DNA of 64,000 nucleotides from Eutreptiella sp. 'Long Island Sound 2002' (taxonomy: Eukaryota; Protista; Euglenida): positions 17,484,001 through 17,548,000 of the forward strand of contig OZ038378.1 of the NCBI GenBank assembly GCA_964036045.1. The letters are read 5' to 3'. A program made the translations under genes and the position numbers. The notes beneath the pieces are model-generated. The model had not been told where the DNA came from. It saw only the letters and a program-made list of their open reading frames with translations, and searched no databases. Numbering within the stretch: position 1 is the stretch's first letter; the number at the start of each line of letters is the position of its first letter. Positions 18,834-30,176 of this stretch are shown piece after piece.

Positions 18834-20977
18834 ATTTCTCATCCTGCGCTCATTTGCCGGTGCCCATGCCAGCAGCCAAGGGACATGCCCGCAGCAGCAG
18901 CTGGAGCCACTATTGCGACCTGCTGCCATGGCCACGATTGTTGTTCTGCCCCACACAAACAATAGGCCGAAGAAAAATAGCAGGCATATGCCTCCGGGTA
19001 AACCGGTTCCAGAAGCACCTGTTGGAGAGTTCCGCTCAGCAGGGGTCGGTGTTCCGGAGGCACTGTCCACACTTTCTGGCTTACTGTCCCACCAGCTACC
19101 CCTCAGCCTCATCATGTCCCCCCCATCCCCGGACCAAGGCCCACCCCAGGGCCTTGGTGGAACATATGTCCGCTGCAGCACACTGCCTAGGCCCCGTGGC
19201 AGGGCCTTGGTAGGACAAACGCAGACTGCAAAGCACTGCCGAGGCCCCACAGCAGGGCCTTTGTAGGGTGAACACCCACTGCACAACACTGTTGAGGCTC
19301 CGCAGCAGGGCCTTACCGGGAGAAACATCCAGTGCACGGGTGGTGAATCCCTGAAACAACTGGCAAAATGCCCGAGCATGCTGCACACAACTGATGGGTG
19401 ATTCTTGGGGATCCAGAACCCCCTGACTCTGACTCTGACTGAGAGTACAAAAAAATTGCAATTTTTCGAAACCGCAAGTATGCCAATGTACTATACTCGG
19501 GTTTACGACCCAAAAATCTACATGGGGTACAGCACAACGATTACTTTGGTTGAGATTTTCGGGCTACCTGCGTCTACAACCAGTCACGTAAACCCTGCAT
19601 CAGTGACAAACCCCAAAAGGCCTATGGACATTGTGGCTATGTTTGTTGTGCTATACCAAAAAAACGATAATCAGTGTGTGTGCGTGCGCGCGTGTGTGTG
19701 TGTTTGTGTGTGTGTTTGTGTGTGTGTTTGTGTGTGTGTTGTTTTTACGCTCTATTCTGAAAAAGCGTAACCCTAGTAACTTTTAGGTTTTTGCTGAAGG
19801 CTTCACAAGATGCGTTTGTTGTAAATCTGAGTACCAACAGAAATGTGAACCAGATTATGTGTTTCTCATTGTGAACATGAGAAAGCAAAACATAATTGAC
19901 CTGAGAACATTTTGCTACAGCCAGTGTAAACCTTTGTTGGCTCAAAACGTGAGAAGAATGAAACCTGGCTCCGGTATGGAAGGGATGCGTCGCCACATTT
20001 CATGCTCTTTCTTGGGATATGGCTCAGATCCGACAAGGGATATGTTGTTCAGGCCCTGGGCCCTACTTTAGGTTCGATTGAATGTGCCACTGCTGAGTGA
20101 TGTACATGCACCATGTACTGTACAAATGCCATGTGTGAAGGCGTATTTCTGTGATTCATTGTCAAGGTTTCCAATGCCTTTAAGGTTCCCTGATGGTACT
20201 TGTGGAAGGTGCTTGAACGATGGCCATTCCCACTGGGCTGTGTCACTGTCCAGGGAGAACCGGGAAAATGGTTGTGCCCATGAAAAGTGCAAAAAGACAA
20301 ATTGTATCAAGGAACGCAGTTTGATGGGGATGATGCGGCCTTAGATGCCCACAGGCCTGCCGTGGTAGTCTGCCTGATCGCTAACTCTGATTGGCACCAC
20401 GTTACATGGCACTTGTCGAATTTTTTTTGACCGTTTTGAATTGGTGGGCAATGCAAGAAGAAAGGGTACCTGTGGTGCATGCGTTGTGAAGGGTGTGCTT
20501 TCTCTTAAAACAAGCAAAGCAGACCCCCGCTAAGACAAGTTTGGGCGACGGTTCCAACTGAGGAGGATGCCTCCTCGCTCGGGATGGAAGAGGTGCTGAA
20601 TGAGGTGCTGTCAGCACGATAGCAGAGATCTCATGGCGAGATCAAGCGGATGCCAAGTGTGTGTTGTGAATCAAATATGCGGCATGCTTTACCTCCCTCA
20701 GTAACAATGGTAGTTGTTGGGTTGTTCTTGTACAAACTAAAAATATTATTTTTGCTTAGATTACAACAGCAAGAAAGCGTTGTTTTACTCCTTTTCTTGG
20801 TACATGAAAAACCGTACCAGGTTTTACAGTAAAAAAAAATTCCCCGGGCACACTTTTATTGGGGATTTGGATCAACAATGTCCCTACACAAAGTCAGCTA
20901 GTGCCCTTGACTCCCCAGTGTTCTGGGAAGCTGTGACATGCTGTGGCGCCAGCAAAACCTGTCATTGTCTGCCGCAG

Positions 20978-21288
20978 TGATCACCGATGGACAGTCGCAG
21001 ACGTTTGCTGGTGATACGGCGACGACGCTCCGAACCAGACAAGCTGCCGAGGACGAGAAGACAAAAGGCGTGATTGTCCTGGCGATTGGAGTGGGCCAAA
21101 AGGCGTGATTGTCCTGGCGATTGGAGTGGGCAATGGCCCCAATACCAATGAGCTGAGGGCGATGGCCAGTGAGCCCAAGGACAGCCATTGGACCCGACTG
21201 GGCAGCTTTGCATCCCTTCTGAGGCTGTCCAAGGCCCTCTCTGAATCATGTGTGCCTGAGATCCCGGATGGATCGAGTCGTACATGGG
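20978..21288 (+). CDS. Host gene exon: vWA C-half (copy 1) carrying a 35-bp tandem duplication and a premature stop
   Basis: VITDGQS...GVIVLAIGVG. CAAAAGGCGTGATTGTCCTGGCGATTGGAGTGGGC occurs twice (21062-21096, 21097-21131), giving an in-frame TGA at 21106-21108. The paralogous exon lacks the duplication. Confidence 0.8.
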
Positions 21289-22070
21289 GTACTGTGCCTC
21301 CCCCGTCATATGTGTGCCACGTTGCATCATGTTGGACGGTGCTGATCACAGGGGCGGACCGTCATTGTGAGCTCTTTGCTTTTGCGTCGGACCGCAAGTG
21401 GAGGTGGGGTCGCTGCAAAGCGCTCCAAAGACTCTGCACAGATGGTGGTGGGGCGTATTGGACGTCCGTTCCGGCCGCTCCCTCCTCCTTGACAGTCAAC
21501 AACGCCCTGCAACACCCGTAAACAACCCTCTGCAAACCAGTACAACGATGAACATTACCCAGAACTCCCTCAAGCAGGAGCATAACCCACAACAACCCTC
21601 ACAGCCCCGCAGCAGCCGTCTTTAGCCTCCACCACGCCTCAGCAACCGTCGCCGACCCGACCCAGCCGCCTCCAAGGTTACGACCCTGTACAGCAATCAG
21701 AAATCTTTGCACTGAAACCCAGACAAATGACGGCTTTTCCCGAGTCTCTCATGGTGCTGGTTCGGAAAAAGACTATTTTTGCTTTTTCTGACGTTTCGGT
21801 CCGTGGTACCCCCGTGCCATCCCTGGAGGGATTCAGGGTTCCGGTCCATGGAGTGTATGGGGGGGTCTGGCCAGGGGCCCGTGTCCCTCCTCCCCCCCCC
21901 ATCTGGCCATTGAAAATCCGTGGCCCCATTTTGATCGAAAGTGTCTTCATCACAGAGCAATGCCCGTGTTGTCCTGCTGATGTAACAGATGTACAGCCCC
22001 TTCTCTTGCAGAACCCTGAACCCTTGGGGGGTATGAGTTGTCCCTTCGCCACGTGATGCCTCATGTGCAG

Positions 22071-26529: not shown

Positions 26530-28300
26530 ATCAATGGATTGTGCCTCAACTCCTGAAATGTCTGCAGTGCAGATTGTGAGCGTGCCACTCAGGCCATTTT
26601 GTGTTGCTAAAACTTGGCCCCAAATTTCCGGTCTCTTTGGCAAACTGCGGTTTTGCTCTGAGGCAATCTTTCTGGTGTGGGTGCATTTGGGGTGCGGTGG
26701 GGGGTTGGCTGGGGCGGGTCAGGGTTCCAAACGACCCCATCCCCCGCCCATACCCACACCTTAATTGTCGTGCAGACGAGAATTGCAGACAGAACGTGGG
26801 TGCGATCGGGCCTGCATTAGCGCGTTGGTTTTGGTGTTGGTTTTCTTATGTTACCCGTGGCGCCGCATCGTCGAGTCTCGGGGCCTAAGACCAGGAGGGA
26901 CACAGAGCCATCCACGGCGTCTCCCCGCAACCGTCTCCGCCTGCGGAACTGCGCCGTCTCCTCGCACCGGCCTCTGTCTGCAGTGCCCCCCCCCGAGGCA
27001 TCGACTCACGTCGCGACCGCAGCAGAATCTGCGTGCGGCAGTACACCCCCTTCCCCCCCCCCCCCCTCTCTCTCGTGGCCTGGCACCCGTACAACAACCC
27101 CCAGGACGGTGGCTTGCAGGCGTGGCTGCCGGCATGCACTGCTGGAACGGCCCCTGGGCATCTACCAACTGCTGTCCGTAAACCAGCAGCCACAGTGAAT
27201 GGCCGACCCCCGTTTTGTGAGCGGCCCAGCGCGGTTGGTCGGCTGCTGCGACTGCTGCATTTTTCGGTAGTCAAGTGTAAAGCAGCCCGGACTTGTCTGA
27301 TTGGGGCCGGCCCTGGACCACAGGCACTGTTGGCAGGAGTATGCTCTGCGTCCCGATTCTGTGCTGCCTGCGTGCATGGTGCCCTGCCCCCTCGCGGTGT
27401 GTGGGTGTCTCCGCAGCCTGTGTCATTGATGTGATGCTTGTGGTGGACCGCTCGGGATCGATTGGTACGGCTGATTGGCAAGAAATGGTCAAGTACACGA
27501 AGGATCGAGTGGGGCGGACCGAATTCACGGACGGCAACGGCAACCGGTTGGGAATTGTAGCGTTCTCGACTTCTTCTGCAGTGGTGTGTGCCATGCAGCA
27601 CGATGCGCAGGCGCTGTTGGCCTGCATCGATAGGATCGTGTACACCGGAGGCTGGACCAATACAGCGCAGGGTATTTGGGATGCGGGAGCACAACTGCAG
27701 CGGTACTCCAGCAGCAGTAGAACGCGGTTGATTGAAGGTGTGTGAGTGTGAGTGAGTGAGTGAGTGAGTGAGTGTGTGTGGGGGGGGGGGGATCAATGGG
27801 CCCGTAGGTGGGCTGTGGCTGGAGCTGGTGCTTCGCTAATGCAGGCCCCACGTTTTGTCTACTAGTCTCTTCTGCACGACAATTAGGGTGTGGGTGTTGC
27901 AACCGAAGCAGTGCCACAAAAAAAAGGTTCGTGACACTGCTACACGGGCCCTGCGACGCCATTTTCTTGGTTTTGGGGGTGCCACGGGTCGTCCATTTGA
28001 CCCAACACGCTGCTTAGTAATCAATGGATTGTGCCTCAACCCCTGAAATCTCCGCAGTGTAGATTGGCAGCGTGCCACTCAGGCCATTGCCATTGCTTTG
28101 TGGCGAAAAATCCCCAGCCCCGGGGAGGGGGCGGGCAGAGGGGTGGATCACAGCTTTCAAAAAGTTTGTGTTGCTAGAAGCTGGCACCATATTTCCGGTC
28201 TCTTTGGCAAACTGCGGTTTTGCTCTGAGGCAATCTTTCTGGTGTGGGTGCATTTGGGGTGCGGTGGGGGTTGGCTGGGGCTGGCCAGGGTTCCAAACGA
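26530..28300. repeat. Two partial copies of a TIR-bearing repeat bracketing the vWA exon
   Basis: 26753-26822 is the reverse complement of 27834-27893. 26530-26730 aligns directly with 28021-28300. Confidence 0.7.
27417..27737 (+). CDS. Host gene exon: vWA N-half (copy 2)
   Basis: 321 bp, phase 1-1, DRSGS MIDAS motif. About 3 substitutions versus copy 1. Confidence 0.9.
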
Positions 28301-28704
28301 CCCTATCCCCCCCTTCGGGCGTCACTAAGGGCTGGTGCCCCTTGTGCGACTGCAACCGTAGACCACCTGCGATTGGTGGCCACCTACCATGGCTCCTGAG
28401 GAGGCCAGGGGTGAGATTTTGTCACCTGTGTTGATGGGTTGGTAGCACCAGGGGACCAGTGCAAACAGATCCTCTCTGCTGTGATGTCCCGTGGAGCCGT
28501 ACGTCATTCTCTTCCATTCCATTTGGAAGGACTGTCGCCTCCAGGAGCCGGCCAAATACTGCCGGCCATCCAAGCTTCATCAGGGGTCCAAGCACTCCGG
28601 GTGAGGTGTAAGGGGTAATCGCTATGGGGCGGACGGGAGGGGATCAGTCATTTCAGATGGCTGTTTTTGAAGATTGGTGTGTGTGTGTGTGCCGTGTAGT
28701 GTGC

Positions 28705-28731
28705 ACTTTCTGAGTGTCTATTTTTTTTTCG
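28705..28731 (+). other. Euglenid spliced-leader (SL) sequence relic in an intron
   Basis: ACTTTCTGAGTGTCTATTTTTTTTTCG is the 26-nt Euglena SL (ACTTTCTGAGTGTCTATTTTTTTTCG) with one extra T. It is followed by AAAGG, not by a GT donor. Confidence 0.9.
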
Positions 28732-29113
28732 AAAGGACCTTGCCTACCTTTTTGTTAATGGCCTGATGAAATTGTCTCGGTGACCAGTGCTCTGCCTTCG
28801 CCTGCTTTCGTCTTCACTGACGTTGTGCCCCGCGTTTGGTCCCCACTGGTTTTCCCGCACGAAGTGTGTGCCGTGTGGTGTTGTGAAGCCAACCCCCGGC
28901 CCATCACAGACGCCCCAATGCTCGCACTCTGCGTGACACTGTCCGTGGCCATAGCAGTGTGGTAACACATGCGCTCAAAGAACAATCAGCATGACCGTCC
29001 CAAGCAGCGGGGGTAGGGGTACCTCTTGGCTCTACGCATCAGCAGCAGTACTGCTGTAGTGGTTATGGAAGGATGTGACAGTTCCGAGATACAGCCCTTT
29101 GTTTGTGCTGCAG

Positions 29114-29389
29114 TGATCACCGATGGACAGTCGCAGACGTTTGCTGGTGATACGGCGACGACGCTCCAAACCAGACAAGCTGCCGAGGACGAGAAGACAA
29201 AAGGCGTGATTGTCCTGGCGATTGGAGTGGGCAATGGCCCCAATACCAATGAGCTGAGGGCGATGGCCAGTGAGCCCAAGGACAGCCATTGGACCCGACT
29301 GGGCAGCTTTGCATCCCTTCTGAGGCTGTCCAAGGCCCTCTCTGAATCATGTGTGCCTGAGATCCCGGATGGATCGAGTCGTACATGGG
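29114..29389 (+). CDS. Host gene exon: vWA C-half (copy 2, intact)
   Basis: CAG|TGATCACCGATGGA (VITDG) ... |GTACTG, 276 bp, phase 1-1. Confidence 0.9.
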
Positions 29390-30176
29390 GTACTGTGCCT
29401 CCCCCGTCATATGTGTGCCACGTTGCATCATGTTGGACGGTGCTGATCACAGGGGCGGACCGTCATTGTGAGCTCTTTGCTTTTGTTTTGCGTCGGACCG
29501 CAAGTGGAGGTGGGGTCGCTGCAAAGCGCTCCAAAGACTCTGCACAGATGGTGGTGGGGCGTATTGGACGTCCGTTCCGGCCGCTCCCTCCTCCTTGACA
29601 GTCAACAACGCCCTGCAACACCCGTAAACAACCCTCTGCAAACCAGTACAACGATGAACAATACCCAGAACTCCCTCAAGCAGGAGCATAACCCACAACA
29701 ACCCTCACAGCCCCGCAGCAGCCGTCTTTAGCCTCCACCACGCCTCAGCAACCGTCGCCGACCCGACCCAGCCGCCTCCAAGGTTACGACCCTGTACAGC
29801 AATCAGAAATCTTTGCACTGAAACCCAGACAAATGACGGCTTTTCCCGAGTCTCTCATGGTGCTGGTTCGGAAAAGGACTATTTTTGCTTTTTCTGACGT
29901 TTCGGTCCGTGGTACCCCCGTGCCATCCCTGGAGGGATTCAGGGTTCCGGTCCATGGAGTGTATGGGGGGGTCTGGCCAGGGGCCCGTGTCCCTCCTCCC
30001 CCCCCCATCTGGCCATTGAAAATCCGTGGCCCCATTTTGATCGAAAGTGTCTTCATCACAGAGCAATGCCCGTGTTGTCCTGCTGATGTAACAGATGTAC
30101 AGCCCCTTCTCTTGCAGAACCCTGAACCCTTGGGGGGTATGAGTTGTCCCTTCGCCACGTGATGCCTCATGTGCAG

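What the first reader, a model, noticed from the sequence alone, without database searches (positions are those of the whole stretch)
28685..28881. Intronic spliced-leader relic bracketed by a direct repeat: candidate retro-inserted trans-spliced RNA
Seen: the euglenid SL (plus one T) at 28705-28731 is followed by AAAGGACC rather than a GT donor. It is flanked by an 18-bp direct repeat with 1 mismatch, GTGTGTGCCGTGT(A/G)GTGT, at 28685-28702 and 28864-28881. The paralogous intron of unit 1 has no such sequence. Established: the SL is added to mRNA by trans-splicing and is genomically encoded only in SL RNA genes, where GT follows it; SL relics mark mRNA retroposition in dinoflagellates. Inference: a ~160-nt SL-capped RNA 5' end was reverse-transcribed and inserted with a TSD, plausibly by LINE machinery like that in this window. 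No poly(A) is present, so this would be a 3'-truncated or non-polyadenylated insertion. I am not aware of this being well described in euglenids.
Basis: partly seen in the sequence, partly recalled or inferred. Interest (0 to 1): 0.78.

Follow-up and report, generated by a model that had tools for sequence, protein, structure and literature searches.

The report
Spliced-leader-capped mini retrocopy in Euglena
A 161-base piece in this Euglena-type gene was copied back from an RNA made when the cell's spliced leader was joined to the last 132 bases of a jumping gene; a sister locus without it shows it was inserted.

Summary
Observation confirmed; interpretation supported and sharpened.

- **What is there.** The spliced leader (SL, with 9 Ts instead of 8) lies at 28705-28731, followed by AAAGGACC. 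An 18-bp direct repeat flanks it.
- **Proof of insertion.** A 96-97% identical sister locus on contig C6 lacks window 28703-28863. Both repeat copies align to the same 18 bases there, so this is an empty site with one target copy. That means a 161-bp insertion with an 18-bp target-site duplication.
- **Parent found.** The 132-nt body (28732-28863) is not a host mRNA. It is the 3' end of a ~6-kb retroelement that ends in a (GT)n tail and inserts into GT repeats. About 180 genomic copies carry ...CCTGTCTCAG|AAAGGACC, a splice acceptor exactly at the junction. 47 copies carry SL|AAAGGACC. All 30 sampled SL copies are short: (GT)n, a variably 5'-truncated SL, ~130 nt, then (GT)n.
- **Not an SL-RNA gene.** There is no GT donor, and the flanks differ from the 1044 canonical SL-RNA genes.
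- **Still open.** The parent has 337-bp terminal direct repeats, a zinc-knuckle ORF1 and a hammerhead-like core at the SL junction. These are Penelope-like traits, but its class is unproven because I could not fetch the middle 2.9 kb.

Earlier notes of this scan reported SL-headed elements elsewhere in this genome. I found no paper describing this in euglenids.

The parts
28685..28702 (.). Left copy of the 18-bp target-site duplication (GTGTGTGCCGTGTAGTGT), at the end of a (GT)7 run
   Evidence: In one search query 1-403 (window 28300-28702) ends here and aligns to C6:5948287-5948684.
28703..28704 (+). Two bases (GC) between the duplication and SL base A1. The C matches the base before the SL in canonical SL-RNA genes (...GGTACAC|TTTCTGAG) and in most other SL relics. 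The origin of the G is unknown (untemplated or cap-related).
   Evidence: the origin is inference.
28705..28731 (+). Complete euglenid spliced leader, 27 nt, with a T9 run instead of T8
   Evidence: T-run lengths of 7, 8 and 9 occur among the 47 sister copies.
28732..28863 (+). 132-nt body, identical to the last 132 nt of the terminal repeat of a ~6-kb (GT)n-tailed retroelement. In parent copies it is preceded by the acceptor ...CCTGTCTCAG.
   Evidence: At least 40 copies at 100% identity; contexts shown; counts.
28731..28769 (+). Hammerhead-like core in permuted (type II) order. It comprises GAAA (28731-28734, the G being the last SL base), the near-palindrome AGGACCT (28734-28740), T at 28741, GCC (28742-44) paired with GGC (28760-62), and CTGATGA (28763-28769). 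No partner strand for helix II is present in this subfamily.
   Evidence: Alignment of 15 subfamily representatives; helix I pairing of 2-6 bp across five sequence forms. No Rfam hammerhead hit at E<=10 or E<=5. Cleavage is untested.
28782..28851 (+). 3' domain closed by the helix GACCAGTG (28782-28789) / CACTGGTT (28844-28851). It is a candidate recognition structure for the element's reverse transcriptase.
   Evidence: The helix is kept in both the MFE and centroid folds. Sister subfamilies keep it through compensatory changes: GATCAG/CTGATC and GACCAGGG/CCCTGGTT. Its function is inferred.
28864..28881 (.). Right copy of the target-site duplication (GTGTGTGCCGTGTGGTGT). Its leading GTGTGT also stands where the element's (GT)n tail would be.
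   Evidence: In one search query 565-1001 starts here and aligns to C6:5947868-5948304, overlapping the other piece by 18 bp.
29113..29325 (+). Downstream host exon encoding the C-terminal half of a von Willebrand A domain. The insertion lies about 250 bp upstream of its AG acceptor, in the same orientation as the gene.
   Evidence: Pfam VWA hit, E 1.7e-7, profile positions 109-170; the sequence ...tgctgcag|TGATCACC is visible. The upstream exon was not identified, so 'intronic' is likely but not proven.

Best explanation
Window 28703-28863 is a retrocopy of a short RNA that was dead on arrival.

**The parent element.** It is a young retroelement of about 6.0 kb. Its parts, in order, are: a gag-like ORF with several CCHC zinc knuckles, a second coding part with a very divergent RT-like domain, a 337-bp terminal direct repeat, and a (GT)n tail. 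It inserts into GT/CA microsatellites. The terminal repeat contains a polypyrimidine tract and an AG acceptor 132 nt before the tail.

**How the template RNA arose.** The host trans-splicing machinery joined the SL to that acceptor. This gave an RNA of SL + 132 nt + (GU)n that still carries the element's 3' end.

**How it inserted.** The element's reverse transcriptase copied this RNA by target-primed reverse transcription. Priming was at a nick inside a short (GT)7 run, where the target's AC strand can pair with the (GU)n tail. Copying ran to the capped 5' end. The second-strand nick was 18 bp downstream, which produced the 18-bp duplication.

**Shown:** the SL/body junction sits exactly at splice sites on both partners; parents with the acceptor exist; the copy number; the variable 5' truncation of the SL; the GT flanks; the empty site with a single target copy.

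**Inferred:**
- That the template was the short RNA spliced at the 3' repeat. The alternative is internal priming on a longer SL-mRNA spliced at the 5' repeat, where the 132 nt are also followed by GTGTGTG.
- Pairing of the tail with the target.
- The class of the enzyme.
For: 1. **Empty site.** Window 28300-28702 aligns to C6:5948287-5948684 (96%) and window 28864-29300 aligns to C6:5947868-5948304 (97%). The two pieces overlap by exactly 18 bp in C6.
2. **Parent acceptor.** 180 copies carry CCTGTCTCAG|AAAGGACCTTGCC, against 47 copies carrying SL|AAAGGACCTTGCC. Both contexts are shown side by side.
3. **Short copies.** All 30 sampled SL copies end about 130 nt after the junction in (GT)n. Their SL starts at varied positions (ACTTTC, CTTTC, TTTC, TTC, TC...) fused to upstream GT repeats. 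This is the pattern expected for reverse transcription reaching an RNA 5' end and joining by microhomology.
4. **Youth.** The window body is 132/132 identical to at least 40 copies, while the flanks differ by 3-4% from the C6 sister.
5. **Parent anatomy.**
   - Junction pairs lie 6007-6026 bp apart.
   - The two ends share a 337-bp repeat at 99.4% identity.
   - 5'-truncated copies exist.
   - ORF1 holds CX2CX4HX4C knuckles.
   - The C-terminal domain has 345 relatives.
6. **Canonical SL-RNA genes look different.** They have a conserved upstream region and GGTATATAC after the SL.
Against: - No RNA data were available, so neither the SL-132-(GU)n RNA nor use of the acceptor was observed directly.
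The single target copy rests on BLAST coordinates alone.
- Reverse transcriptase identity is not established. There was no Pfam hit, no PDB sequence hit, a poor model (pLDDT 52.7) and no fold match. The position of the second aspartate of RT motif C is N, T or S in this family.
- The opposite history is possible: loss from C6 by recombination between the 18-bp repeats. It is only moderately disfavoured by the zero divergence of the insert.
Confidence: 0.85

Rival explanations
1. Same retrocopy, but the template was the element's long SL-capped mRNA, spliced at the acceptor of the 5' terminal repeat. Reverse transcription would start internally at the short GUGUGUG that follows the 132 nt there, not at the 3' end of a short RNA.
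For: In 5' repeats the 132 nt are followed by GTGTGTG and then GTCTGCTG.... A Penelope-like element initiates reverse transcription at internal RNA sites in vitro (PMC11167929).
Against: In that study the initiation site was not homologous to the target. Only 3.5 GU repeats are available here. None of the 30 sampled SL copies of the main subfamily reads through into ORF1; one copy of a sister subfamily (L079) continues past the GT stretch into unidentified sequence.
Confidence: 0.15
2. A chimera made by template switching. The reverse transcriptase copied the element's 3' end and then jumped onto SL RNA or another SL-capped RNA, as in U6-L1 chimeric pseudogenes.
For: Non-LTR reverse transcriptases do switch templates (own knowledge). 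The tandem and partial-tandem structures of this family fit such jumps.
Against: The junction is identical in 47 copies and in several diverged subfamilies (349 copies with SL + CGAAAGG). On one partner it lies exactly at the AG acceptor and on the other exactly at the SL donor. Random switches would scatter, and a jump onto the SL RNA would start copying at its 3' end and so carry over its intron part, which is absent here.
Confidence: 0.04
3. A variant or decayed SL-RNA gene, or a DNA-level fusion such as an element inserted into an SL-RNA gene (as SLACS/CZAR do in trypanosomatids) and later dispersed.
For: The complete SL is present, and a CUUUUUGU stretch at 28748-28755 vaguely resembles an Sm site.
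Against: There is no GT donor. The conserved SL-gene upstream sequence (...CGAAGACGTTATGCC...GAGGTAC) is absent, as is the intron part seen in the canonical SL-RNA genes sampled; 1044 copies genome-wide share their continuation. Sister copies have SLs truncated at varied 5' positions. The fold is not unusually stable (z = -1.27). No Rfam family matched.
Confidence: 0.01
4. The flanking 18-bp repeat is just GT-rich background, and the piece arrived by some DNA rearrangement rather than by insertion with a duplication.
For: The region is GT-rich, and sister copies sit in pure (GT)n where no duplication can be scored.
Against: The repeat includes the non-microsatellite part GCCGTGTRGTGT and occurs only twice in 64 kb. 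Both copies map to one 18-bp stretch of the C6 sister locus.
Confidence: 0.02

Closest known systems
SL-relic retrogenes of dinoflagellates (Slamovits and Keeling 2008; Symbiodinium survey PMC5585692, read)
   Same: A trans-spliced leader, normally added only to RNA, is found written into genomic DNA at the 5' end of a retrocopy. It marks reverse transcription of a processed RNA.
   Different: Here the RNA is not a protein-coding host mRNA but the 3' terminal 132 nt of a retroelement. There is no poly(A), and the tail and target are (GT)n. The copy has no prospect of expression. The host is a euglenid, for which my searches of the held library found no report.
SINEs and other non-autonomous elements that share the 3' tail of a partner LINE
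   Same: A short (~160 nt) element whose 3' end is identical to that of an autonomous element, and which is evidently mobilised by that element's machinery.
   Different: The head is the spliced leader, not a tRNA, 7SL or 5S promoter. The copies carry neither a promoter nor an acceptor, so each new copy probably has to be made afresh from a parent transcript.
Penelope-like elements of the Naiad/Chlamys type, and retrozymes derived from PLE pseudo-LTRs (PMC8557442; bioRxiv 10.64898/2026.07.22.740005; PMC4209133, listed)
   Same: Shared traits are terminal direct repeats from partial tandems, 5' truncation and an insertion bias for (CA)n/(GT)n microsatellites. One Chlamys type also has an upstream zf-CCHC ORF. 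A hammerhead core lies in the terminal repeat, and short non-autonomous derivatives of that repeat exist.
   Different: PLE-type RT and a GIY-YIG nuclease were not shown here. The hammerhead order is permuted and lacks one helix-II strand. The derivative is headed by an SL. That paper mentions neither euglenids nor trans-splicing (0 occurrences each).
SL-associated retrotransposons of trypanosomatids (SLACS, CZAR, CRE)
   Same: Both link a retroelement with the spliced leader in a euglenozoan.
   Different: Those elements insert into SL-RNA genes at the DNA level (own knowledge). Here the SL was spliced onto the element's RNA, and the copies lie far from SL-RNA genes.

Membership tests
SL-relic-bearing retrocopy | Genomic SL not followed by the SL-RNA donor and intron | tested here: met
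   AAAGGACC follows the SL. Canonical genes continue GGTATATAC.
SL-relic-bearing retrocopy | Parent locus in which the same sequence follows an AG trans-splice acceptor | tested here: met
   180 exact ...CCTGTCTCAG|AAAGGACCTTGCC junctions.
SL-relic-bearing retrocopy | Insertion signature: target-site duplication and an empty site | tested here: met
   18-bp duplication. The C6 sister locus lacks 28703-28863, and its two alignment pieces overlap by 18 bp.
SL-relic-bearing retrocopy | Poly(A) tail and a protein-coding mRNA body (classical processed retrogene) | tested here: not met
   There is no poly(A). The body is a non-coding retroelement 3' end that finishes in (GT)n.
SINE (tail-sharing non-autonomous retroposon) | 3' end shared with an autonomous partner | tested here: met
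   132/132 identity with the 3' end of the ~6-kb element.
SINE (tail-sharing non-autonomous retroposon) | Internal promoter head (tRNA, 7SL or 5S) allowing self-propagation | tested here: not met
   The head is the 27-nt SL. No Rfam family was found in the window or in the region at E<=10.
Penelope-like element (parent) | Pseudo-LTRs from partial tandem arrangement | tested here: met
   337-bp repeat at both ends, 99.4-99.7% identical, about 6.0 kb apart.
Penelope-like element (parent) | TERT-like/PLE reverse transcriptase | tested here: inconclusive
   Motif-like strings by eye: ELDCKxQFxxI, IPMGGxFSAQxADL, QFRD[NTS]IL. No Pfam hit, no PDB hit and no fold hit. ESM Atlas neighbours carry HTH_animal + RVT_1 at scores of 0.92-0.94, which is a lead only.
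Penelope-like element (parent) | GIY-YIG endonuclease | not testable with these tools
Penelope-like element (parent) | Hammerhead ribozyme in the terminal repeat | tested here: inconclusive
   GAAA and CUGAYGA are conserved across most subfamily representatives, with a few degraded copies. Helix I forms in five different sequence versions. No Rfam hammerhead hit. Helix III has no loop, and the 5' strand of helix II is absent in this subfamily.
Penelope-like element (parent) | Microsatellite insertion bias | tested here: met
   Nearly all sampled copies are flanked by (GT)n on both sides. (CA)n bias is reported for Chlamys PLEs (PMC8557442).
SL-RNA gene | GT donor, conserved upstream region and intron part | tested here: not met

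The most novel reading that the evidence does not exclude
Trans-splicing inside the terminal repeat may be a programmed step of this element family rather than a by-product. The SL would cap the RNA, supply the last G of the GAAA core and, in some branches, provide the missing helix-II strand of a split hammerhead. The result would be a minimal template for the element's reverse transcriptase. That would be a class of SL-dependent non-autonomous retroelements (349 SL + CGAAAGG junctions genome-wide) with no described counterpart.
Probability: 0.2. Interest if true: 0.85.

Novelty: new variant of a known kind. Interest (0 to 1): 0.6.

Why it matters
This locus gives clean, locus-level proof that SL-capped RNAs are reverse-transcribed back into a euglenid genome: an empty site, a target-site duplication and parent loci with the acceptor. 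In the papers I could search, this was documented only for dinoflagellates.

It also shows one way a retroelement can spawn short non-autonomous copies. The host's own trans-splicing cuts out an RNA consisting of the leader plus the element's 3' end.

About 3400 of the 4471 SL copies in this 2.28-Gb genome lie outside canonical SL-RNA genes. SL relics could therefore serve as a genome-wide marker of retroposition and help explain genome expansion in Euglena. For annotation, a genomic SL must not be read as an SL-RNA gene or as a sign of cDNA contamination.

Tried and rejected
- **Rfam.** There were no hits at gathering thresholds on the whole window. Permissive scans of 28600-28950 and of four loci gave only chance hits in GT repeats, so no known RNA family, SL RNA or hammerhead model applies.
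- **Unit 1 as empty site.** The paralogous intron does not align, so it cannot serve.
- **The window's own LINE as source.** Neither blastn nor tblastn found this family in the window outside the insertion itself.
- **Classifying the parent's enzyme.**
  - Pfam gave only weak zinc knuckles for ORF1 and nothing for the C-terminal domain or for ten relatives.
  - A 16-sequence profile found nothing in the PDB.
  - The AlphaFold model was poor (pLDDT 52.7), and Foldseek gave nothing below E 0.65.
  - ESM Atlas gave only leads.
- **Fetching full-length copies.** I did not try to get those letters by another route.
- **The search of earlier findings by sequence.** Blank.
- **Whole-RNA fold.** It is not unusually stable (z = -1.27).
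- **RNAalifold covariation.** The term was near zero (-0.05). Support for the 3' helix therefore rests on two compensatory changes found by a targeted script.

Full report
**1. Observation**

The euglenid spliced-leader core occurs once in the 64-kb window, at 28707-28728. None is expected by chance. Read directly, the full leader ACTTTCTGAGTGTCTA-T9-CG spans 28705-28731 and is followed by AAAGGACC. The 18-mer GTGTGTGCCGTGT(A/G)GTGT occurs only at 28685-28702 and 28864-28881, with 0.02 expected. No Rfam family reaches threshold anywhere in the window.

**2. The body is a dispersed repeat with two kinds of left neighbour**

The window is G000:C1:17484001-17548000 of a 2.28-Gb assembly. The 132 nt at 28732-28863 match at least 40 places at 100% identity, from 658 first-look candidates. 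Reading 30 of them shows two contexts.

- Most copies are preceded by ...GTCACTCCTGTCTCAG, a pyrimidine tract and an AG, directly before AAAGGACC.
- A minority are preceded by the SL.

Exact-junction counts are 180 for the acceptor form and 47 for the SL form. The SL therefore ends at its donor, and the body begins at an acceptor.

**3. The empty site**

Searching window 28300-29300 against the genome found a sister locus on C6.

- Query 1-403 (window 28300-28702) aligns to C6:5948287-5948684 at 96%.
- Query 565-1001 (window 28864-29300) aligns to C6:5947868-5948304 at 97%.

The missing query part is exactly 28703-28863. The two pieces overlap by 18 bases in C6 (5948287-5948304), so both copies of the direct repeat map to one stretch there. 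This is what an unoccupied target looks like.

The insert is 132/132 identical to the family's commonest sequence, while the flanks differ by 3-4% from C6. That favours gain on C1 over loss on C6.

**4. Sister copies**

All 30 sampled SL-junction loci have the same build: (GT)n, then an SL whose 5' end varies, then about 127-141 nt of body, then (GT)n.

- The SL starts at varied positions: ACTTTC, CTTTC, TTTC, TTC, TC and shorter. Each is fused to GT repeats.
- Several diverged subfamilies share the junction. Their tails end ...CCCGCACGAA...CCCCTTCACCAA or ...TTACCCGCACGAA.
- Genome-wide, 349 SL copies continue CGAAAGG.
- No sampled copy of the main subfamily runs on into coding sequence.
- In the window copy the right-hand duplication itself begins GTGTGTG. 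No separate tail is visible, which fits priming by pairing of the RNA's (GU)n tail with the AC strand of a nick inside the (GT)7 run.

**5. The parent element**

- Acceptor junctions come in pairs 6007-6026 bp apart.
- The two ends share a 337-bp direct repeat at 99.4-99.7% identity.
- The 5' copy of the repeat is preceded by (GT)n. It is followed by GTGTGTG, about 130 nt, and an ORF starting MADPPIICRRCHKGGHHASAC. That ORF has four or five CCHC knuckles and a coiled-coil-like stretch, and is still open after 514 codons. Pfam gives only weak zinc-knuckle hits.
- Other copies are 5'-truncated at various points.
- The last 255 codons before the 3' untranslated part have 345 relatives in the 1.84-billion-protein library, all of them short fragments. 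Neither these 255 codons nor ten of the relatives give a Pfam hit, and a 16-sequence profile gives no PDB hit.
- The relatives show strings resembling RT motifs A, B and C: ELDCKxQFxxI, IPMGGxFSAQxADL and QFRD[N/T/S]IL. The second aspartate of motif C is not conserved.
- A model was too poor to use. ESM Atlas neighbours carry HTH_animal and RVT_1 in rotifers, which is a lead only.

The parent is therefore a retroelement with pseudo-LTR-like ends, a gag-like ORF1 and a microsatellite target. These traits match Chlamys-type Penelope-like elements as described in PMC8557442.

**6. RNA features of the body**

*Hammerhead-like core.* Across diverged subfamilies the junction region keeps GAAAGG, a loopless near-palindrome (AGGACCU, AGGCGCCU, AGGUGCCU), one unpaired base, a helix and CUGAYGA, apart from a few degraded copies. 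The helix is GCC/GGC, GCCA/UGGC, UUGG/CCAA or GCGCGG/CCGUGC. These are the hammerhead cores in permuted order, with covariation in helix I.

Several points count against a working ribozyme in this copy:
- No Rfam hammerhead model matches.
- Helix III cannot form within one molecule.
- In this subfamily nothing pairs with the strand after CUGAUGA.

In two other branches (L027 and the second unit in L062) that strand contains CACUCAG, which is complementary to the SL's CUGAGUG. This agrees with earlier notes of this scan. Cleavage would remove the SL, and the genomic copies keep it, so their templates were uncut.

*3' domain.* The rest of the body is closed by the helix GACCAGUG/CACUGGUU. Sister subfamilies keep it through compensatory changes. 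It is a plausible recognition structure for the enzyme.

**7. Rivals**

- **SL-RNA gene.** Excluded. The 1044 canonical genes have a conserved upstream region and GGTATATAC after the SL, and they cluster near contig ends.
- **Template-switch chimeras.** These would not give one exact splice-site junction in hundreds of copies.
- **Chance GT-rich repeats.** Excluded by the empty site.
- **Which RNA was the template.** This stays open. It was either the short RNA spliced at the 3' repeat or a long SL-mRNA primed internally, as a PLE does in vitro (PMC11167929).

**8. Context and novelty**

The SL core occurs 4471 times, so roughly 3400 copies are not canonical SL-RNA genes. A sample shows several other SL-headed repeat families, and one locus has three nested SLs.

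Earlier notes of this scan reported related features elsewhere in this genome: SL-headed LINEs, Penelope-like elements with permuted hammerheads at SL junctions, and abundant short SL-headed elements. Those were AI leads. I re-tested only the parts named above.

In the held literature I found SL relics as retroposition marks for dinoflagellates (PMC5585692) and pLTR-derived retrozymes for animals. I found nothing for euglenids. The chromosome-level E. gracilis paper does not mention the spliced leader at all. I rate this a new variant of a known kind.

**9. Host context**

The insertion lies about 250 bp upstream of the acceptor of an exon encoding the C-terminal half of a VWA domain. It has the same orientation as the gene. 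I did not identify the upstream exon, so 'intronic' is likely but not proven.

Noticed in passing
G000 contig ends, e.g. C1:0.05-0.46 Mb, C9:0.02-0.65 Mb, C3:164.0-164.7 Mb, C4:178.5-179.4 Mb: 1044 canonical SL-RNA genes (SL + GGTATATAC) lie in loose arrays with 5-40 kb spacing near contig ends. The classic description is of short tandem SL/5S repeats. What fills the spacers was not examined.
   Followed up: no
Loci L012-L030 (G000:C1): Several other repeat families begin with the SL: L014/L015/L017/L029 (SL + GTGTCTTTTTGTCCATGC, with C- or G-rich upstream DNA), L012/L020, L021/L024 and L025/L028. About 3400 of the 4471 genomic SL cores are not canonical SL-RNA genes.
   Followed up: partly
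L013 (G000:C1 around 1042751, minus strand): A full SL is followed by two further partial SLs in tandem before the body. This suggests repeated rounds of trans-splicing and retroposition, as reported for dinoflagellate genes.
   Followed up: no
L075 (G000:C10 around 2190820) and L087-L089 (G000:C14:28664342-28664885): In L075 two different SL-headed mini-elements lie head to tail, the second having landed in the GT tail of the first. L087-L089 hold three SL-132 units in tandem with a 258-bp period. The tails of this family seem to attract further insertions or to duplicate.
   Followed up: no
L047:2367-3131:- and relatives P0001-P0150: The C-terminal domain of the parent element belongs to a family of 345 detectable relatives with no Pfam or PDB match. 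It has RT-like motifs A and B, but D-N/T/S where RT motif C has D-D, followed by an invariant CxC...C...C cluster. This is either a very divergent or a non-canonical polymerase domain.
   Followed up: partly
L027 and L062 (second unit), after CTGACGAG: In these branches the strand after the hammerhead core contains CACTCAG, complementary to CUGAGUG of the spliced leader. The SL could therefore supply helix II there. The subfamily in this window lacks the match.
   Followed up: partly
window 20970-21594 vs 29106-29700; G000:C6:5947868-5948684: The host is a gene with repeated VWA-domain units. Their exons are 93% alike within the window, while the introns do not align. A 96-97% identical copy of the whole region, intron included, lies on contig C6, so it is a recent large duplication or a homeologous chromosome.
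   Followed up: partly
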